Below, one piece after another: positions 1,241 to 58,170 of a stretch of 64,000 nucleotides of DNA. A program made the translations under genes and the position numbers. The notes beneath the pieces were generated by a model. It was not told the origin of the DNA, made no database searches, and worked only from the letters and a program-made list of their open reading frames with translations. The DNA lies in sequence record NC_028999.1. One strand, written 5' to 3'. Each line of letters begins with the position of its first letter. Position 1 is the first letter of the stretch.

Positions 1241-1993
1241 ATGAACCGACACAATTCCGAGGAAGTTCGCCAACTGATCGCCGATACGGCTGTGCAACTG
1301 GATACGCTGATGGAGAGTAATCACCTCAATGGCATCCGTTTCACTTTCGTGGCACCCAGTGAGGAGACCTTCAACGAACTGTCCAAGATCATTCATGAAG
1401 TTGAAAACCTGGGTCACACCATGCGTGTGCTGCGTGGGTCTCTCCATGACTTCAAAGAAATCATGGACGCTCAAGACTTTATCGTCACCGCTGGTAACAG
1501 TTACGGACACATGACTGGTGGTCTGGATGGTGCTCTGGCTGATATCTATCCTGATCTGATCAAACGCGTTCCATCTACCATTGCTCTTAAGTGTCATGGC
1601 GAGCTCAATGTGGGTGATGGTGTACTGGTGCATCGACATATCCAAGAACCCATCTACGAGAAGATCGTGTACAAGGATCAATACCTGGTTTACGTGCCGA
1701 CCATGCGTACTCCACGTCGGTTGGCAAAAGGTAGTGATGTACCTTATCTGGCTACCCACAAGGCCCTGAGTCTGATTCGCCAAGGCCTGATCCAACATCC
1801 TACCTTCCGTAATGTGTTCATGACCCTCATGGGTACTGGCACTGGTAACATTCCCGTGAAGGTAGCAGTCGAGCAATTCCTGCTGGCTCTTCGGAAAGCT
1901 ACTCGGATTGTCAATGTTAAGAAGCTGTTCGATGATGGTAAAGACGTCGACCATGAACTGGTTAACATTTGGAAAAGGTATGGCAATGAGTAA
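1241..1993 (+). CDS. Macrodomain (ADP-ribose binding/hydrolase) protein
   Basis: DFIVTAGNSYGHMTGGLDGAL and YLVYVPTMRTP match macrodomain motifs. Confidence 0.85.
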   Translation: MNRHNSEEVRQLIADTAVQLDTLMESNHLNGIRFTFVAPSEETFNELSKIIHEVENLGHTMRVLRGSLHDFKEIMDAQDFIVTAGNSYGHMTGGLDGALADIYPDLIKRVPSTIALKCHGELNVGDGVLVHRHIQEPIYEKIVYKDQYLVYVPTMRTPRRLAKGSDVPYLATHKALSLIRQGLIQHPTFRNVFMTLMGTGTGNIPVKVAVEQFLLALRKATRIVNVKKLFDDGKDVDHELVNIWKRYGNE

Positions 1994-4549: not shown

Positions 4550-4854
4550 TGCTTGAACAATCCCAGAACTGCTTCAAAATCAACTACGCTGAAATCATCG
4601 GTAACGAAGGTAAAACCGACGGTAAGCCGCTTACTGCTTTCGGTGATGAAGCCGAAGTTCAACGTCGGCTGCAAGAGCTGGTTGACAAAGACATCCTGCG
4701 TTGTTCGATTCATTGGGGCGCGCATGACTACGCCACCTTCGATATCGATGTTCCGGGTACCGACCAGGTTCAAATCCTGAAGCCCGGTGACCGTGTGAAT
4801 TTCGTTGGTGATTCGTACGAAATCGTTATCGATCCATCTAACAAGGAAGAGTAA
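4549..4854 (+). CDS. Hypothetical protein
   Basis: ORF track; TAATG coupling. Confidence 0.8.
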   Translation: MLEQSQNCFKINYAEIIGNEGKTDGKPLTAFGDEAEVQRRLQELVDKDILRCSIHWGAHDYATFDIDVPGTDQVQILKPGDRVNFVGDSYEIVIDPSNKEE

Positions 4855-5540
4855 TGTCTACGACTAGACTGGAATACATCCTCGAAAAGATTGCCATCTC
4901 TGGTAATGGTGAACAATTCAAGCACAACTTCTGTACTTACCGAAATGGTCAAGTACTTGGGTTGGGTCGTCCTGGCGTCACCAGTCGGAAACTACGTGAT
5001 TGGTTGTTCACCCAGAATGCTCACCAGTTCCTGAGTGAAGAGGACATTAGTTATCTGATTCACTGCATGGACGCCTACAGCGCAACTGTGCATGATGACC
5101 TCAATGAGTTCCTTTGTGAGCTGGGTCTGTGGTCTCCGGGGAAAGAATCTCCTGTGGATTGTCTGGCTGCGTTCACCTACCGTCTGTTCCATGGAGACTT
5201 CGTTTCGTACGAGCGTTTCCAGCGTAACAGTCGTTTTGCTGAGGCAGCTTATGGCGCTGATATGGCTACTGAGGTATCTTACAGTAAGCCTATACCAGTA
5301 TTCACCAAGACACTGGAAGAGGCTGACCTCTGGTACGAATTTGGACAAGAGATCGCTCCGATCAATGAAGATGGTATTCGCCGTCTACCTGAGGACAAGA
5401 AGATTGTCCGGGACTGGTTGAACCAGCACAATCTCCCGTTGGTGTACACCTGCTTCGACTTCAGTCCGGAGCCTGTACCCGAGGTTGATGCATCCGATGG
5501 TGAAAAGGTTCAGGAACACAAGTGTGCCATCTGTCAATAA
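4854..5540 (+). CDS. Hypothetical protein
   Basis: ORF track; TAATG coupling. Confidence 0.8.
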   Translation: MSTTRLEYILEKIAISGNGEQFKHNFCTYRNGQVLGLGRPGVTSRKLRDWLFTQNAHQFLSEEDISYLIHCMDAYSATVHDDLNEFLCELGLWSPGKESPVDCLAAFTYRLFHGDFVSYERFQRNSRFAEAAYGADMATEVSYSKPIPVFTKTLEEADLWYEFGQEIAPINEDGIRRLPEDKKIVRDWLNQHNLPLVYTCFDFSPEPVPEVDASDGEKVQEHKCAICQ

Positions 5541-48895: not shown

Positions 48896-49054
48896 TTGCT
48901 GTTCTTCGAGGCGAGTTCGATAAACATGGTTATACCTCACGCCAACAGGGCATAGGCAAGGTAGTTGGACTGTTCCTCCAACTACCCTACCACCAAGGTA
49001 TCTGATGCAAGCATCAACCTCATATAATTGCATGTCTATGAGGATATGTCTTTA

Positions 49055-49246
49055 TTACCGCGGAGTGATGCGGAACGCTTTAGTCCACAGGTCTATCCGG
49101 AAGAACGGGCGGTATTCATTGCGACCGCCGCCAGCACGAATCATCTCGTTCCCTGGGGTGAGGGTCAGTCGTTCTACCCGATAGTTCGTAGCCTTGTGAA
49201 TAATGCCGTTGAACTTACGAGCGATTTCCAGCTTATTGAATTTCAT
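49055..49246 (-). CDS. Small basic protein
   Basis: GGGAG RBS 6 nt upstream on the - strand. Confidence 0.7.
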   Translation of the reverse strand: MKFNKLEIARKFNGIIHKATNYRVERLTLTPGNEMIRAGGGRNEYRPFFRIDLWTKAFRITPR

Positions 49247-49269
49247 AGATTACTCCCGTCCTGTTTGAG

Positions 49270-49295
49270 GGCATAAAGGTAGTCTTGCGACTACC
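49270..49295 (-). terminator. Terminator hairpin
   Basis: GGTAGTC-GCAA-GACTACC-TTTATGCC. Confidence 0.8.
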
Positions 49296-49302
49296 CCGTG
49301 CG

Positions 49303-49345
49303 GCTGTACCTGCGTCCACTCTTTCGACTGGTTTTACCCTACAGC
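49303..49345 (-). ncRNA. c-di-GMP-I (GEMM)-like half aptamer
   Basis: GCTGTA-GGGTAAAA-CCAGTC-GAAA-GAGTGG-ACGCAGG-TACAGC; second hairpin absent. Confidence 0.5.
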
Positions 49346-49452
49346 TAGGCTCATCAGTAATGAATTTTGCCAGCGCACATTTAGGAGGCGACAACTGTTA
49401 ATAGGTCGGGGGTGATAGCATTTGGGCCCAGTCTTTAACAGTGTCGCCAATT

Positions 49453-49541
49453 TGGCGGAAGCGCAGAGATTCGAACTCTAGGGGCCCTTTGGACCCGTCT
49501 GATTTCAAGTCAGGTGCCTTAAACCACTCGGCCACGCTTCC
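49453..49541 (-). tRNA. tRNA-Ser(TGA)
   Basis: GGAAGCG acceptor, CT-TGA-AA loop, long variable arm, TTCGAAT, encoded CCA. Confidence 0.95.
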
Positions 49542-49549
49542 ATTGTACA

Positions 49550-49641
49550 TTAGTCGTAACGATGTTTTAACCAGCGTAAACTACCGGCCCGAAGGTGGGC
49601 CGCCCGAGGGTGTTGAACCCCCGATTCTTCGTTACGACTAA
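49550..49641 (-). ncRNA. Circularly permuted, anticodon-less tRNA-like RNA
   Basis: 13-bp terminal stem enclosing a T-arm, a loop-closed acceptor-like stem and a D-arm, in that order. Confidence 0.75.
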
Positions 49642-49652
49642 ATTTCTGAATA

Positions 49653-49729
<77 letters not shown>

Positions 49730-49730
49730 A

Positions 49731-49821
49731 ATATGTGACTAGGTAGAACGAGTGCACTTTTCGCATCCAATCAACCCAAGTTAGGAAGATAGATACCACG
49801 CGCAATACCCTAGTCACATAT
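49731..49821 (-). ncRNA. Stem-closed leader RNA of the Thr/Ser tRNA operon
   Basis: 13-bp inverted repeat ATATGTGACTAGG/CCTAGTCACATAT between the promoter and tRNA-Thr. Confidence 0.55.
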
Positions 49822-49841
49822 GGTAATACACTGAGTATAGT
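49817..49841 (-). promoter_or_regulatory. Bipartite promoter
   Basis: ACTATACTC-N12-TATG. Confidence 0.7.
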
Positions 49842-49891
49842 TTTACTTACAATGACGCAATGGACCACAGTTCGTTATTCTGGCTAGATCC

Positions 49892-49923
49892 GGCATAAAG
49901 GGAACCCGAAGGCTCCCTTTATT
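49892..49923 (-). terminator. Terminator of the Kelch gene
   Basis: AAAGGGAGCC-TTCG-GGTTCCCTTT-ATGCC on the - strand. Confidence 0.85.
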
Positions 49924-49944
49924 CGCTGCTGGTATCTGACCACA

Positions 49945-51804
49945 TTAACTAGGGTTATACACGTACAGTGTTTTCTGTATAACGTTCCCAGGCTGTACGC
50001 CACCCGACACATATATCATGCCATTGACAGATGCACACGAAATGTCGTTACCAATTACAGGTAGATCAGGTAGTTGTTTCCATGTATTAGCAACCACATC
50101 ATATTCCCAGAAATCACTGAACGTTTGTGAAGCTGAAGCACCACCGACAATGTAAACCTTATTGCCAACTGACGCCATACCAAACGAAACTCTTGCCTGT
50201 ATAGCGGTGGGGACATTGGCTAGCTTTGTCCATACACGGGTATTCAAATCCAGTACATGGACATCCCTCGACATGGTAGTTCCATTCAACCAACCAAATG
50301 CCAAGACTAGTTTACCCGCAGCAATAGCCATCCGACCATTCTTGCGTGGTGGGGGTGTGGAACCAGAAACCGATGGTTTAGTCCATTTATTTCCAGTACC
50401 GTCCAGATTGTACTGATAAAGGGCATTGTCAGTTGGACCACTATCACCGAACATATAAAGACTTCGTCCATAAGAAGCCATGCAGTGACCCATTCTCCAA
50501 CTGGGCATTGCGCCATCAGTAATTGAACTCCAGGTATTTACACTGGGGTCGTATGCAAACATATCCGGTGAAGAATTAGATCCACTGAAAATATAAGTCT
50601 TCCCATCTATTGTTGCACCAGCGGTTTCATGCCTTCCTGGTCCTTGGACAGCATCTTCGCTCCATGTGTTCGTATATGGATCGTAACTGTAATTGGTATT
50701 TGTTACCACCGCGCCAGTAGATCCGTAAAGAACCCTGTATTTACCAGCACTCTCAACCCCAACAGCACTCCGGCGACCCGCAGGCATATCGGCTAGCTGT
50801 GTCCATTGGTTCTTCTCAATTGATGGGGCTAATCGAATGCGATAGACATCTTCTAAGAGGTTTGCTTTCAAGAAATATCCTTGGCTGGACATTGGAACCT
50901 TGGTACCACCACTGACAATCATATCCCCATTACCCATCGGTGCAACGGAAACGATGTTTCTATAAGGGATATTCAACTTCAGTGGTTCAGCAAATCGCTT
51001 AGTTTTAATGTGGAATCGTTGTGCATACATTTCACCATTAACGACGTTAATATAGTTGTAGTAATCGCCAGTAACGTATCCGTTACCCTGCCACACCACT
51101 CCTTTATCTTCCGGTAACGTCATCCATGGCGTTTGTTCCCAGGTACCTGCTGCATTATTGTATCTATAAACGTCGAGATACAATCCACCCTTGTCATTAT
51201 TCCAACCACCAAAATGGTAGAAGTAACCATCGTAGTAAAAAAGCTGCTGCCCTGAGCGTGTATCACCGGCGTAGTTTTGACCAGCTTTCCAATCATTAGT
51301 AGCCGGACGGAGTCTAATAGAGTTATTGGAAGTACCGTTCGCTATCATTACGTCGGTACCACCGTCAGAAGCTGCCGCTGTACCATAGAACGAAAATGGC
51401 CCAGGTACAGTGCTCACTCTGGCGCCAGTTGCCTTAGTAAAGCGCTGCATTCTATTGGTCAGACCAGTACCGCCCATACCCGCAGAGTCATATCCGGTGA
51501 TACCACCGAATGTAAAGAACTCTCCGTTATGCATTACATGGTAGCCGATAGAAAAACCAGGGGAGAACGTTCCAGCTGTGGTTGATCCAATATACGAGAA
51601 AGGTTCCAACGTATACTGCCTGAATACGGTCCCTGCTACTGAACCTTCAGTATGGTGACCAGAACCAACAAACAGTGTGTTACCATCCACGTAAGAAGAT
51701 GAACCTCCTAACGCTACTCCTAAATCACCTAGTTTATCTATCCTCCCAAAACCGGTTAAAGGTAGCTGCTCGCCTTTTCCTGACGAAAGTAATATTTCAA
51801 ACAT
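49945..51804 (-). CDS. Kelch-repeat (double beta-propeller) protein, possibly virion-associated
   Basis: About 12 repeats with GG, Y..D and W signatures (IYVSGG, VYIVGG, FYHFGG). Confidence 0.85.
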   Translation of the reverse strand: MFEILLSSGKGEQLPLTGFGRIDKLGDLGVALGGSSSYVDGNTLFVGSGHHTEGSVAGTVFRQYTLEPFSYIGSTTAGTFSPGFSIGYHVMHNGEFFTFGGITGYDSAGMGGTGLTNRMQRFTKATGARVSTVPGPFSFYGTAAASDGGTDVMIANGTSNNSIRLRPATNDWKAGQNYAGDTRSGQQLFYYDGYFYHFGGWNNDKGGLYLDVYRYNNAAGTWEQTPWMTLPEDKGVVWQGNGYVTGDYYNYINVVNGEMYAQRFHIKTKRFAEPLKLNIPYRNIVSVAPMGNGDMIVSGGTKVPMSSQGYFLKANLLEDVYRIRLAPSIEKNQWTQLADMPAGRRSAVGVESAGKYRVLYGSTGAVVTNTNYSYDPYTNTWSEDAVQGPGRHETAGATIDGKTYIFSGSNSSPDMFAYDPSVNTWSSITDGAMPSWRMGHCMASYGRSLYMFGDSGPTDNALYQYNLDGTGNKWTKPSVSGSTPPPRKNGRMAIAAGKLVLAFGWLNGTTMSRDVHVLDLNTRVWTKLANVPTAIQARVSFGMASVGNKVYIVGGASASQTFSDFWEYDVVANTWKQLPDLPVIGNDISCASVNGMIYVSGGVQPGNVIQKTLYVYNPS

Positions 51805-54025: not shown

Positions 54026-54111
54026 TGGTGGTTGAAGGAAGGAATTGAACCTCTAGCCTAGGCGGGGGTGTTACAGACCCCTGACAGTAGCCATCTGTCT
54101 ATACATCAACC
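54026..54111 (-). tRNA. tRNA-Tyr(GTA), non-canonical
   Basis: GGGGT-CT-GTA-AC-ACCCC, variable arm, TTCAATT, ACCA end; atypical D-arm and acceptor. Confidence 0.8.
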
Positions 54112-54469: not shown

Positions 54470-54494
54470 TATACTATTACATACTGAGTAAGTT
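54470..54494 (-). promoter_or_regulatory. Bipartite promoter
   Basis: AACTTACTC-N12-TATACG. Confidence 0.7.
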
Positions 54495-58025: not shown

Positions 58026-58170
58026 ATATAGAGAACAGACGACAAGGCCATGTTGTAGCTTTCGCTAGTTATACGTATCTCATTCCCTAGGGAAGTGCCT
58101 AACGGCTTCTTTCGTACAACATTCATGGCTTTACAGACGTTGCTCAGCCCTCGTGAGCTGTTCTCTACAT
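58026..58170 (-). ncRNA. Stem-closed multi-branched RNA upstream of tRNA-Leu (~145 nt)
   Basis: 13-bp terminal stem with a G.U pair on the - strand; GCCATG/CATGGC; TAGC-GAAA-GCTA; GCC-GTTA-GGC; TTCCC-TA-GGGAA. Confidence 0.65.

What the first reader, a model, noticed from the sequence alone, without database searches (positions are those of the whole stretch)
49550..49641. Circularly permuted tRNA mimic with no anticodon, embedded between tRNA-Thr and tRNA-Ser
Seen on the - strand: UUAGUCGUAACGA-AGAAUC-[GGGGG UUCAACA CCCUC]-GGG-[CGGCCC ACCUUC GGGCCG]-GUA-[GUUU ACGCUGGUUA AAAC]-A-UCGUUACGACUAA. The order is T-arm, then acceptor stem closed by a loop starting A-C-C, then a D-arm with GG; a perfect 13-bp open helix replaces the anticodon arm. 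Known: bacterial YrlA Y RNAs use this permuted tRNA topology, and permuted tRNA genes exist in red algae and archaea. No Ro60/TROVE gene is in this window. Inference: an L-shaped elbow mimic acting as a decoy for anticodon nucleases, tRNA-sensing defences or modifying enzymes, or a two-piece RNA after loop cleavage.
Basis: partly seen in the sequence, partly recalled or inferred. Interest (0 to 1): 0.9.

Follow-up and report, generated by a model that had tools for sequence, protein, structure and literature searches.

The report
Phage-borne circularly permuted tRNA mimic
A 92-base stretch between two tRNA genes of the Pseudomonas jumbo phage PhiPA3 encodes a small RNA shaped like a tRNA, but with its ends where the anticodon should be; it belongs to a rare, previously undescribed family of such RNAs scattered among large virulent phages, and its function is unknown.

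Summary
Window 49550-49641 (- strand) lies in Pseudomonas phage PhiPA3 between tRNA-Thr(UGU) and tRNA-Ser(UGA).

It is not a lone oddity or a deletion scar. I found at least 18 relatives in unrelated large virulent phages: phiKZ-like jumbo phages, T4-like pf16, T5-like GSW6, Seunavirus GAP31/NINP13076, Peetri and uncultured contigs. A covariance model built without PhiPA3 finds the PhiPA3 copy full-length (51.5 bits, E about 5e-11). Tandem-tRNA junctions score about 17 bits.

All 12 modelled closing-helix pairs, the 6 T-stem pairs and 2 inner acceptor pairs covary. The tRNA core nucleotides are conserved.

The family is not YrlA. Rfam's YrlA model misses it but hits a true phage YrlA. No Ro60 homologue was detected in any carrier phage, and the Ro-binding motif is absent.

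No Rfam family, database annotation or paper describes it. A strict consensus pattern found no copy in 185,579 representative bacterial and archaeal genomes.

Function is unknown. The best guess is a trans-acting tRNA-shaped ligand or decoy, possibly an RNase P substrate. PhiPA3 carries a stripped-down variant.

The parts
49629..49641 (-). P1 5' strand (UUAGUCGUAACGA). It forms the open 13-bp helix that occupies and extends the anticodon-stem position.
   Evidence: Perfect inverted repeat (I11). Paired in the MFE fold. The homologous helix covaries at all 12 modelled pairs across 19 relatives.
49624..49628 (-). Junction AGAAU, the variable-loop analogue (tRNA positions 44-48).
   Evidence: Aligned to the family's AG.A junction. 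The first A is invariant in 19/19 and the G in 18/19.
49605..49623 (-). T arm: 6-bp stem CGGGGG/CCCUCG with the T-loop UUCAACA.
   Evidence: All six family T-stem pairs show double changes. T-loop U54, U55, C56, R57 and A58 are conserved in 16-18 of 19.
49603..49604 (-). GG bulge between the T stem and the capped stem. It is the remnant of the family's 6-nt bulge NNGGAM.
   Evidence: Structural alignment A3. In the family, GGA is conserved in 18/19.
49585..49602 (-). Acceptor-like stem CGGCCC/GGGCCG capped by the loop ACCUUC.
   Evidence: GGCCC/GGGCY is invariant in the family. The CC after the stem is invariant in 19/19.
49582..49584 (-). G-U-A linker. The U and A correspond to tRNA U8 and A9.
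   Evidence: U and A are invariant in 19/19.
49564..49581 (-). D arm: stem GUUU/AAAC with loop ACGCUGGUUA, which contains the GG.
   Evidence: The D loop is identical to that of Peetri, L004 and L006. The second stem pair is U-A here where the other 18 have C-G, a compensatory change (col 74-92, CG:18 UA:1). A14 and A21 are invariant.
49563..49563 (-). Single A between the D stem and P1 (tRNA position 26).
   Evidence: It is G in the other 18 members.
49550..49562 (-). P1 3' strand (UCGUUACGACUAA).
49653..49729 (-). tRNA-Thr(UGU) immediately upstream. Its 3' maturation would set the 5' end of the element.
   Evidence: ARAGORN; Rfam tRNA model, 65.7 bits. The processing step is inferred.
49453..49541 (-). 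tRNA-Ser(UGA) 8 nt downstream. RNase P cleavage at its 5' end would set the 3' end of the element.
   Evidence: ARAGORN; Rfam tRNA model, 53.2 bits. The processing step is inferred.

Best explanation
The element is a small RNA gene on the same strand as the neighbouring tRNAs. It is a divergent, stripped-down member of a previously undescribed family of RNAs, mostly 95-105 nt, that are circularly permuted tRNA look-alikes carried sporadically by large virulent phages of Gammaproteobacteria.

Shown:
- The fold is a four-way junction with the tRNA arms in permuted order, supported by covariation.
- The tRNA core nucleotides needed for the L-shape are conserved.
- PhiPA3's copy belongs to the family.
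- No Ro60 homologue was detected in any carrier phage, and no conserved protein gene lies next to the RNA.
- No bacterial or archaeal genome searched holds the family's consensus pattern.

Inferred:
- The RNA is co-transcribed with tRNA-Thr and tRNA-Ser.
- It is released by the same processing that matures those tRNAs: 3' trimming of tRNA-Thr and RNase P cleavage at the 5' end of tRNA-Ser.
- It folds into an L-shape with an intact D-loop/T-loop elbow. The acceptor arm is closed by a loop, and the anticodon arm is replaced by a long open helix. As made, it can therefore be neither charged nor decoded.
- It acts in trans as a tRNA-shaped ligand, that is a competitor, decoy or substrate, for a factor that reads the tRNA body rather than the anticodon.

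The most concrete candidate partner is RNase P. It could bind the elbow and the 'NCC' that follows the capped stem, and could cut the capping loop 5' of the GGGC strand to give a two-piece tRNA-like RNA. This is documented for M. smegmatis YrlA.

My confidence that this is a real, conserved, permuted tRNA-like RNA is about 0.9. My confidence in the trans-acting ligand/decoy mechanism is about 0.35-0.4. My confidence in RNase P cleavage specifically is lower still. The single confidence figure given for this explanation (0.5) is a compromise between the identity and the mechanism.
For: Identity and fold:
- Sequence and fold as described.
- Relatives were found by blastn in Peetri, Psa21, RVTF4, pf16, Astolliot, Milchi, GAP31, EC152, FENT2, NINP13076, KE22/23 and GSW6, and by pattern search in IMG/VR and metagenome contigs.
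- Model R1, built from 13 members without PhiPA3, hits window 49551-49640(-) full-length at 51.5 bits, E 4.9e-11. It hits the other non-seed members at 83-92 bits.
- True tandem-tRNA junctions score only about 17 bits.

Covariation on 19 sequences:
- 93.8% of cells are paired, 21 of 29 pairs have double changes, and the covariation score is 0.645 against 0.19 for shuffles (0 of 500 reach it) and 0.09-0.15 for slid controls.
- RNAalifold independently recovers the four helices.
- About 35 G-U cells, including G-U at one capped-stem pair in 14 of 19 members, show that the selected structure is RNA on this strand.

tRNA core nucleotides:
- Invariant or nearly so: U8, A9, A14, A21, the U12-A23 pair, G26, A44, the T-loop UUCRA and the D-loop GG.
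- The two members that lack the T-loop motif also lack the D-loop GG (L013, L016).

Autonomy:
- 4 of 19 members have no tRNA anywhere in the fetched locus (Peetri, L019, L020, L023).
- Peetri's copy is followed by a GC-rich hairpin and a U run that reads as an intrinsic terminator.
- So the RNA is not merely a tRNA spacer.

Accessory-gene behaviour:
- About 14 carriers among 50,697 phage records.
- 90.8% identity between a Pseudomonas T4-like phage and a Salmonella T5-like phage.
- No hit to the strict consensus pattern in 185,579 representative bacterial and archaeal genomes.

RNase P precedent:
- M. smegmatis YrlA is cut by RNase P in the equivalent loop and receives CCA in vivo (PMC4201824).
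- The CC after the capped stem is invariant in 19/19 although the loop centre varies.
- That bacterial RNase P RNA pairs with C74 and C75 of substrates is established knowledge, not tested here.
Against: - No expression, end-mapping or binding data exist for any member. The function is entirely inferred.
- The family's most conserved single-stranded motifs are the GGA bulge and the AACA at the 3' end of the capping loop. PhiPA3 has lost AACA and reduced the bulge to GG. PhiPA3's copy may therefore have lost or changed the family's specific function.
- As an RNase P site, the loop is atypical compared with the neighbouring genuine phage tRNAs. Those encode a full CCA end and mostly U at -1 (30 of 49). 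The family has an invariant A at -1 and GCCA in only 3 of 19.
- The acceptor plus T stack is 13 bp with a 6-nt bulge, not the canonical 12 bp.
- Two or three members lack a canonical T-loop, so the elbow cannot be the only functional determinant.
- PhiPA3's variant is known from this one genome only.
Confidence: 0.5

Rival explanations
1. It is a cis-acting processing or insulator module of the polycistronic tRNA transcript. A stem-closed, tRNA-shaped spacer would recruit RNase P or RNase E, or keep neighbouring tRNAs folding independently. It would have no role once excised.
For: - Most members sit 2-11 nt after the CCA end of a tRNA or tRNA-like RNA, often about 8 nt before the next tRNA.
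- In PhiPA3, other unrelated stem-closed structured segments flank tRNAs in the same way: 49731-49821 (z -5.4) and 58026-58170 (z -4.0).
Against: - 4 of 19 members lie in loci with no tRNA at all.
- A generic spacer would not keep 80-90% sequence identity in its core across unrelated phage groups.
- It would also not keep invariant single-stranded motifs such as GGA, GCC and AACA.
- The other PhiPA3 spacers have no homologues elsewhere, unlike this element.
Confidence: 0.2
2. It is a functionless relic of the junction between two tandem copies of one tRNA gene. The pieces would be the T arm and acceptor 3' strand with NCC from copy 1, a spacer, then the acceptor 5' strand and D arm from copy 2. 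On this view PhiPA3's copy is decaying.
For: - This origin explains the topology and the NCC after the capped stem (inference).
- PhiPA3's copy lacks several family-invariant motifs and scores far below the others: 51.5 bits against 83-108.
- Tandem-tRNA junctions weakly resemble the model.
Against: - The family helices covary strongly.
- In PhiPA3 every pair present in the structural alignment is intact: 27 of 27, with the other 2 of the 29 model pairs deleted. Counted on PhiPA3's own helices, that is 13/13 in P1, 6/6 in the T stem, 6/6 in the capped stem and 4/4 in the D stem.
- That includes a compensated D-stem change.
- A decaying pseudogene should show broken pairs.
- The family is spread by horizontal transfer among unrelated phages.
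Confidence: 0.08
3. It is a YrlA-type Y RNA that tethers a Ro60 (Rsr) protein of the phage or the host.
For: - It has the same arm order as YrlA: ends in the anticodon-stem position, T arm, capped acceptor-like stem, D arm (PMC4201824).
- PhiPA3 has a CGAA at the junction of P1 and the variable loop.
Against: - Rfam RF02553 finds nothing in the element or in 7 family loci, yet it detects the Bxz1 YrlA next to its Ro60 gene.
- Model R1 gives only 9 bits on that YrlA.
- tblastn with Bxz1 Ro60 finds 356 phage records, none of them from Pseudomonas, Salmonella, Cronobacter or Enterobacter phages.
- No protein is shared next to the RNA across loci.
- The full GNCGAAN0-1G motif occurs in 1 of 19 members.
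- In YrlA the acceptor-like stem is the variable part. Here it is the most conserved part.
Confidence: 0.03
4. It is a genuine circularly permuted or split tRNA gene that matures into a decoding tRNA.
For: The order of halves, with the 3' half before the 5' half joined at the acceptor end, is that of permuted tRNA genes (established knowledge, Cyanidioschyzon merolae). NCC follows the acceptor-like stem.
Against: - There are no anticodon-loop nucleotides. The termini form a perfect helix of up to 27 bp (11-14 bp in most members), with no bulge-helix-bulge motif and no conserved sequence.
- Bacterial hosts lack the splicing endonuclease pathway (established knowledge).
- The T stem is 6 bp and the acceptor-like stem carries a 6-nt bulge.
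Confidence: 0.02
5. It is a DNA-level element, such as a miniature inverted-repeat transposable element or a recombination site. On this view the 13-bp arms are terminal inverted repeats.
For: It has perfect 13-bp terminal inverted repeats and a sporadic distribution.
Against: - The arm sequences are unrelated between copies, while pairing is preserved.
- G-U pairs, which would be A-C mismatches on the other strand or in DNA, are frequent.
- There is one copy per genome.
- No target-site duplication is visible.
- No transposase is associated.
Confidence: 0.02

Closest known systems
YrlA (Y RNA-like A; Rfam RF02553) of bacteria and actinobacteriophages
   Same: - It is a permuted tRNA mimic with its 5' and 3' ends in the anticodon-stem position.
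- The arm order is T arm, loop-capped acceptor-like stem, D arm.
- The tRNA tertiary nucleotides are conserved.
- At least one YrlA (M. smegmatis) is cut by RNase P in the capping loop and receives CCA (PMC4201824).
   Different: - No match to the YrlA model (with the positive control).
- No Ro60 gene nearby, and no Ro60 homologue detected anywhere in the carrier phages.
- No Ro-binding module: the closing helix is perfect and its sequence is not conserved.
- The acceptor-like arm with its bulge and loop is the most conserved part, whereas in YrlA it is the least conserved.
- The carriers are virulent phages of Gammaproteobacteria, not phages of Actinobacteria.
- The RNA sits in tRNA clusters, not next to rsr.
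Circularly permuted tRNA genes (Cyanidioschyzon merolae; some archaea)
   Same: The 3' half of the cloverleaf is encoded before the 5' half, and the two are joined through the acceptor end.
   Different: - Those genes regenerate a normal tRNA through a bulge-helix-bulge motif, circularisation and RNase P/Z cleavage.
- Here there is no anticodon loop, no bulge-helix-bulge motif and no such pathway in the host.
tRNA-like domain of tmRNA, including the two-piece (permuted) tmRNAs
   Same: It is a tRNA-like body without an anticodon, and permuted gene forms exist.
   Different: - ARAGORN finds no tmRNA here.
- There is no tag reading frame and no free alanine-accepting CCA end.
- This RNA has a full D arm, which tmRNA lacks.
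Stable RNAs of unknown function in phage tRNA clusters (T4 species 1 and 2, RNA C and RNA D)
   Same: They are small stable non-tRNA RNAs encoded inside a phage tRNA gene cluster and matured with the tRNAs. This comparison rests on my own knowledge and was not checked here.
   Different: No sequence relationship was seen. The family is absent from T4 itself, and within the T4-like phages in the collection it was found only in pf16.
tRNA-like processing modules (mascRNA of MALAT1, gammaherpesvirus 68 tRNA-like RNAs, plant-virus tRNA-like structures)
   Same: They are viral or cellular RNAs that copy the tRNA shape to engage RNase P, the CCA-adding enzyme or other tRNA enzymes.
   Different: - Those keep a normal, non-permuted arm order with a free acceptor end.
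- They are eukaryotic systems.

Membership tests
YrlA / bacterial Y RNA (Rfam RF02553) | Match to the family covariance model | tested here: not met
   There is no RF02553 hit on window 49250-49900 at E<=10, nor on 7 family loci at E<=1. As a positive control, RF02553 hits the Bxz1 YrlA at 32.5 bits, E 2.3e-4.
YrlA / bacterial Y RNA (Rfam RF02553) | Encoded within about 4 kb of a Ro60/TROVE gene on the same strand | tested here: not met
   No protein family is shared within +-5 kb across the 19 loci. The neighbours in PhiPA3 are virion and hypothetical proteins. tblastn with Bxz1 Ro60 finds no Pseudomonas, Salmonella, Cronobacter or Enterobacter phage.
YrlA / bacterial Y RNA (Rfam RF02553) | GNCGAAN0-1G Ro-binding motif near the 5' end | tested here: not met
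   The full motif occurs only in Peetri (1 of 19). PhiPA3 has AACGAAG, that is the CGAA core only. The other 17 have no CGAA at that position.
YrlA / bacterial Y RNA (Rfam RF02553) | Arm order T arm, capped acceptor-like stem, D arm, with the ends in the anticodon-stem position | tested here: met
YrlA / bacterial Y RNA (Rfam RF02553) | Bound by the Ro60 (Rsr) protein | not testable with these tools
   This needs immunoprecipitation.
Phage permuted tRNA-like RNA family defined here (model R1) | Full-length match to a covariance model built without the sequence being tested | tested here: met
   51.5 bits, E 4.9e-11, model positions 1-102 of 102. Tandem-tRNA junction controls score about 17 bits.
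Phage permuted tRNA-like RNA family defined here (model R1) | Four helices (P1, T stem, capped stem, D stem) all intact | tested here: met
   27 of 29 model pairs are formed. The other 2 are deleted rather than broken.
Phage permuted tRNA-like RNA family defined here (model R1) | Two inner acceptor pairs plus the 6-nt bulge NNGGAM | tested here: not met
   PhiPA3 lacks the two pairs on the 5' side and keeps only GG of the bulge.
Phage permuted tRNA-like RNA family defined here (model R1) | Capping loop GCC...AACA | tested here: not met
   The PhiPA3 loop is ACCUUC. The CC is kept (19/19), but G73 is A and the AACA is absent.
Phage permuted tRNA-like RNA family defined here (model R1) | Conserved tRNA core nucleotides (U8, A9, A14, A21, A44, T-loop UUCRA, D-loop GG) | tested here: met
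   All are present in PhiPA3.
Canonical tRNA | Detected by tRNA finders; has an anticodon loop and a free acceptor end | tested here: not met
   ARAGORN and Rfam RF00005 give no call on 49550-49641. There is no 7-nt anticodon loop, and the acceptor-like stem is closed by a loop.
Circularly permuted tRNA gene | Termini carry the anticodon-loop halves in a bulge-helix-bulge motif that allows circularisation | tested here: not met
   The termini form a perfect 13-bp helix without bulges. In relatives the helix reaches up to 27 bp (11-14 bp in most), with no conserved sequence.
Miniature inverted-repeat element (DNA level) | Conserved terminal repeats, several copies per genome, target-site duplication | tested here: not met
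   The arm sequences differ in every copy. The window holds a single copy, and so does each record. No duplication is seen at the flanks.

The most novel reading that the evidence does not exclude
The family is a phage counter-defence RNA. An anticodon-less, uncleavable and unchargeable tRNA body would soak up or mis-trigger a host factor that senses or attacks tRNAs through their L-shape and acceptor arm, such as a tRNA-targeting immune nuclease or toxin. Alternatively, after RNase P cutting it would become a two-piece tRNA-like RNA with a new activity. This would make it an RNA decoy spread horizontally among unrelated virulent phages, independent of Ro60.
Probability: 0.15. Interest if true: 0.9.

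Novelty: new variant of a known kind. Interest (0 to 1): 0.7.

Why it matters
Permuted tRNA mimics in bacteria and phages have so far been tied to Ro60 (YrlA). This family shows that the same architecture exists without Ro60, in virulent phages of Pseudomonas and enterobacteria, embedded in tRNA clusters and moving between unrelated phage lineages.

It is a well-supported new structured RNA class: strong covariation, no Rfam family, no database annotation, and some records annotate spurious ORFs over it. That gives annotators something concrete to add.

It also gives experimentalists a tractable handle. The RNA is small, and it occurs in culturable phages such as PhiPA3, pf16, GAP31, GSW6 and Psa21. 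This could help show what tRNA-shaped RNAs do during infection, at a time when tRNA-targeting defences and phage tRNA counter-measures are an active question.

Tried and rejected
- Rfam at gathering and at permissive thresholds on the window and on family loci returned only the flanking tRNAs and noise.
- A hammerhead-like CUGAUGAG...CGAAA string at about 49300-49345 (- strand) has no convincing stem II and no Rfam hit at E<=10. I treat it as chance.
- The pattern hit L005 1551-1605 and the R1 hit L005 2805-2888 are ordinary tRNA or tandem-tRNA sequence.
- Most GC-rich loci from the relaxed pattern (L025-L054) and L057 are chance matches.
- A search for a conserved neighbouring protein found none. 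Pfam on neighbours in the tRNA-free loci shows unrelated functions.
- The Thg1-like gene beside L019 is not a consistent partner. Thg1 homologues are common in large phages of other hosts, and no enterobacterial carrier appears among the listed hits.
- I considered a pseudoknot between the bulge GG and the loop CC. Both partners are invariant, so covariation cannot test it, and the geometry looks strained (my inference). I did not adopt it.
- The GGA bulge could be read as a CsrA/RsmA site. But there is a single site, it lies in a bulge, and PhiPA3 lacks it. I kept this only as a weak idea.
- The leader and trailer comparison with genuine neighbouring tRNAs shows that the capping loop is not a typical tRNA-to-tRNA junction. 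That weakens both the pure-relic reading and the simple RNase P reading.
- Literature searches found no description of this RNA.
Full report
**Source and observation**

The window is part of Pseudomonas phage PhiPA3. A 1.2-kb query around the finding (window 49000-50200) is 100% identical to NC_028999.1 294208-295408. PhiPA3 is a 309-kb phiKZ-like jumbo phage of P. aeruginosa.

ARAGORN places tRNA-Thr(tgt) at 49653-49729 and tRNA-Ser(tga) at 49453-49541 on the same strand. Rfam's tRNA model confirms both.

The element is unannotated in RefSeq. Neither ARAGORN nor Rfam calls it, even at E<=10.

Its 13-nt arms are perfectly complementary with 66 nt between them (I11). By my own arithmetic, about 0.14 such repeats are expected by chance in 64 kb.

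**It has relatives**

A sensitive blastn of the element found one weak hit outside PhiPA3, in Pseudomonas putida phage vB_PpuM-Peetri (72% identity over 80 nt, E 0.03). Reading that locus shows the following:
- The arm order is the same.
- The D loop is identical (ACGCUGGUUA).
- The D stem carries a compensatory change.
- The closing helix has a completely different sequence but is again perfect.
- No tRNA lies within 2.5 kb, and a GC-rich hairpin followed by a U run, which reads as an intrinsic terminator, sits just downstream.

Using Peetri's copy as the query revealed clear relatives in these phages:
- Psa21 and RVTF4 (jumbo Pseudomonas phages)
- pf16 (T4-like, P. putida)
- Astolliot and Milchi (Pseudomonas)
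- GAP31, EC152, FENT2, NINP13076, KE22 and KE23 (Seunavirus; Cronobacter, Enterobacter and Salmonella hosts)
- GSW6 (T5-like, Salmonella)

Pattern scans added about ten uncultured viral contigs and three further metagenome contigs.

No record annotates an RNA there. Some annotate short 'hypothetical protein' ORFs over it. Rfam finds nothing but the flanking tRNAs in seven of these loci.

The family is rare. It occurs in about 14 phages among 50,697 records. A strict consensus pattern had no hit in one genome each of 185,579 bacterial and archaeal species.

**Structure of the family**

A hand structure on a MAFFT alignment of 13 members that excluded PhiPA3 is strongly supported. I used it to build covariance model R1.

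R1 recovers every member and finds the PhiPA3 element full-length at 51.5 bits, E 4.9e-11. Other non-seed members (Peetri, NINP13076, Psa21) score 83-92 bits. Genuine tandem-tRNA junctions, the obvious false positive for such a model, score only about 17 bits.

On the model-guided alignment of 19 sequences, the pair counts are as follows:
- 93.8% of pair cells are standard pairs.
- 21 of 29 pairs show changes on both sides.
- The covariation score is 0.645. Shuffles give 0.19 (0 of 500 reach the observed value) and slid registers give 0.09-0.15.
- All 12 modelled closing-helix pairs covary.
- All 6 T-stem pairs covary.
- Two inner acceptor pairs covary (U-A/A-U and C-G/U-A).

RNAalifold independently predicts the same four helices. 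Frequent G-U pairs, including one capped-stem pair that is G-U in 14 of 19 members, mean that selection acts on RNA of this strand, not on DNA.

The architecture, from 5' to 3', is:
- P1, an open helix of up to 27 bp (11-14 bp in most) with no conserved sequence.
- A 4-nt junction, AGAA.
- A 6-bp T stem, usually with the T-loop UUCAACU.
- Two acceptor pairs, then a conserved 6-nt bulge NNGGAM.
- A 5-bp stem GGCCC/GGGCY capped by a loop that reads GCC...AACA.
- U8 and A9.
- The D arm, GCUU-A...GG...A-AAGC.
- One G, then the 3' strand of P1.

The nucleotides that build the tRNA L-shape are invariant or nearly so: U8, A9, A14, A21, the U12-A23 pair, G26, A44, the T-loop UUCRA and the D-loop GG. 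The two members that lack the T-loop motif also lack the D-loop GG (L013 and L016).

So this is a tRNA-derived body in circularly permuted order. It has a capped acceptor arm and no anticodon loop.

**Where PhiPA3 fits**

PhiPA3 carries the most reduced version. The two inner acceptor pairs and most of the bulge are gone, leaving only GG. The capping loop is ACCUUC instead of GCC...AACA. Position 26 is A.

Yet every pair that is present is intact (27 of 27 aligned pairs). One D-stem pair is changed compensatorily.

That pattern indicates continued selection on the fold. It also suggests possible loss or change of whatever the GGA and AACA motifs do. No second example of this reduced variant was found.

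**Context**

Most members lie inside tRNA gene clusters, 2-11 nt after the CCA end of a tRNA. The upstream tRNA varies (Lys, Tyr, His, Thr, or non-canonical tRNA-like RNAs). Often the next tRNA starts about 8 nt downstream.

Four of the 19 are in loci with no tRNA. No protein gene is shared next to the RNA across loci. Identity of 90.8% between the copies in a Pseudomonas T4-like phage and a Salmonella T5-like phage points to horizontal transfer.

In PhiPA3 the unit reads as follows:
- a promoter-like motif, TACTCAGTGT (49828-49837);
- a 91-nt stem-closed leader (49731-49821);
- tRNA-Thr;
- the element;
- tRNA-Ser;
- a hairpin.

Release of the element by tRNA processing (RNase P at tRNA-Ser, 3' trimming of tRNA-Thr) is an inference from this gene order.

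**Comparison with YrlA**

YrlA RNAs have the same permuted order, and one of them (M. smegmatis) is cut by RNase P in the capping loop and receives CCA (PMC4201824).

Membership fails on every defining test:
- Rfam's YrlA model RF02553 does not hit the element or its relatives. It does hit the genuine YrlA upstream of the Ro60 gene of mycobacteriophage Bxz1.
- R1 gives only 9 bits on that YrlA.
- tblastn with Bxz1 Ro60 finds 356 phage records, all from phages of Actinobacteria apart from four phages of Agrobacterium, Sinorhizobium and Vibrio. None is a carrier of this family.
- The GNCGAAN0-1G motif is present in 1 of 19 members.
- In YrlA the acceptor-like stem is the variable part. Here it is the most conserved.

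The element therefore works like a YrlA in shape, but it is not a YrlA.

**Mechanism**

What is shown is a conserved, L-shape-competent tRNA body that cannot be decoded, because it has no anticodon, and cannot be charged as made, because its acceptor end is capped. It is carried as an accessory gene by virulent phages, not next to any conserved protein gene and with no Ro60 homologue detected in its carriers.

My best inference is a trans-acting tRNA-shaped ligand, decoy or substrate for a factor that reads the tRNA body.

RNase P is the most concrete candidate:
- The CC after the capped stem is invariant in 19/19, while the centre of the loop varies.
- Bacterial RNase P RNA pairs with C74 and C75 of its substrates (established knowledge, not tested here).
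- The YrlA precedent exists.

Several points count against a simple RNase P substrate:
- The neighbouring genuine tRNAs encode a full CCA end and mostly U at -1 (30 of 49). The family has an invariant A at -1 and GCCA in only 3 of 19.
- The acceptor plus T stack is 13 bp with a bulge.

A purely cis-acting spacer role is weakened by the four tRNA-free loci and by the sequence conservation. A relic is weakened by the covariation and the intact helices. A true permuted tRNA gene and a DNA-level element are both excluded on structure.

**Novelty and verdict**

I found no Rfam family, no annotation and no paper describing this RNA.

It is a new, Ro60-independent variant of the known idea of a permuted tRNA mimic. 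It defines a new structured RNA family in phages.

The existence and fold of the family are solid. The function is open. PhiPA3's copy is an atypical, reduced member.

Noticed in passing
window 49731-49821 (- strand): A second perfect 13-bp helix (ATATGTGACTAGG/CCTAGTCACATAT) closes 65 nt directly 5' of tRNA-Thr. Folded with 2 flanking nt on each side (49729-49823), the MFE is -37.1 kcal/mol and z is -5.4. It is not related to the tRNA-like family, and blastn finds no homologue outside PhiPA3.
   Followed up: partly
window 58026-58170 (- strand): A stem-closed structured segment of about 145 nt lies directly 5' of tRNA-Leu (z -4.0). A 14-bp hairpin (49386-49448) follows tRNA-Ser. PhiPA3 tRNAs seem to be embedded in stem-closed modules.
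   Followed up: partly
window 49828-49837 and 54481-54490 (- strand): TACTCAGTRT occurs exactly twice in 64 kb (0.17 expected). Each copy lies just upstream of a tRNA transcription unit, so it is a candidate phage promoter element. A similar ATACTCAAGTGT precedes the tRNA-Leu unit.
   Followed up: partly
window 49453-49541, 49653-49729, 54030-54109: The RefSeq record labels the tRNA-Ser(tga) as tRNA-Thr, the tRNA-Thr(tgt) as tRNA-Cys, and a tRNA that ARAGORN reads as tRNA-Tyr(gta) as a tRNA-Val pseudogene. These are probable mis-annotations.
   Followed up: no
L019 7227-8024: A Thg1-like tRNA-His guanylyltransferase gene (Pfam PF04446, E 1.6e-31) lies 240 nt downstream of a family member in an uncultured 212-kb phage contig. 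It is not a consistent partner in the other carriers.
   Followed up: partly
L013 about 4700-4760 (-) and L016 about 1825-1900 (-): Immediately upstream of the family member lies another stem-closed RNA that ends in an acceptor-like helix plus GACCA or ACCA. ARAGORN does not call it a tRNA, so it may be a further non-canonical tRNA-like RNA.
   Followed up: no
L012 1482-1604; also FENT2, KE22 and KE23 records: Short 'hypothetical protein' ORFs are annotated over the RNA in several GenBank records. They are probably spurious.
   Followed up: no
L003 2461-2487 and L006 about 5330-5350: In Peetri and L006 an upstream hairpin's 3' arm can alternatively pair with sequence downstream of the element. 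This would extend P1 to 25-27 bp, a possible alternative-structure or RNase III site.
   Followed up: no
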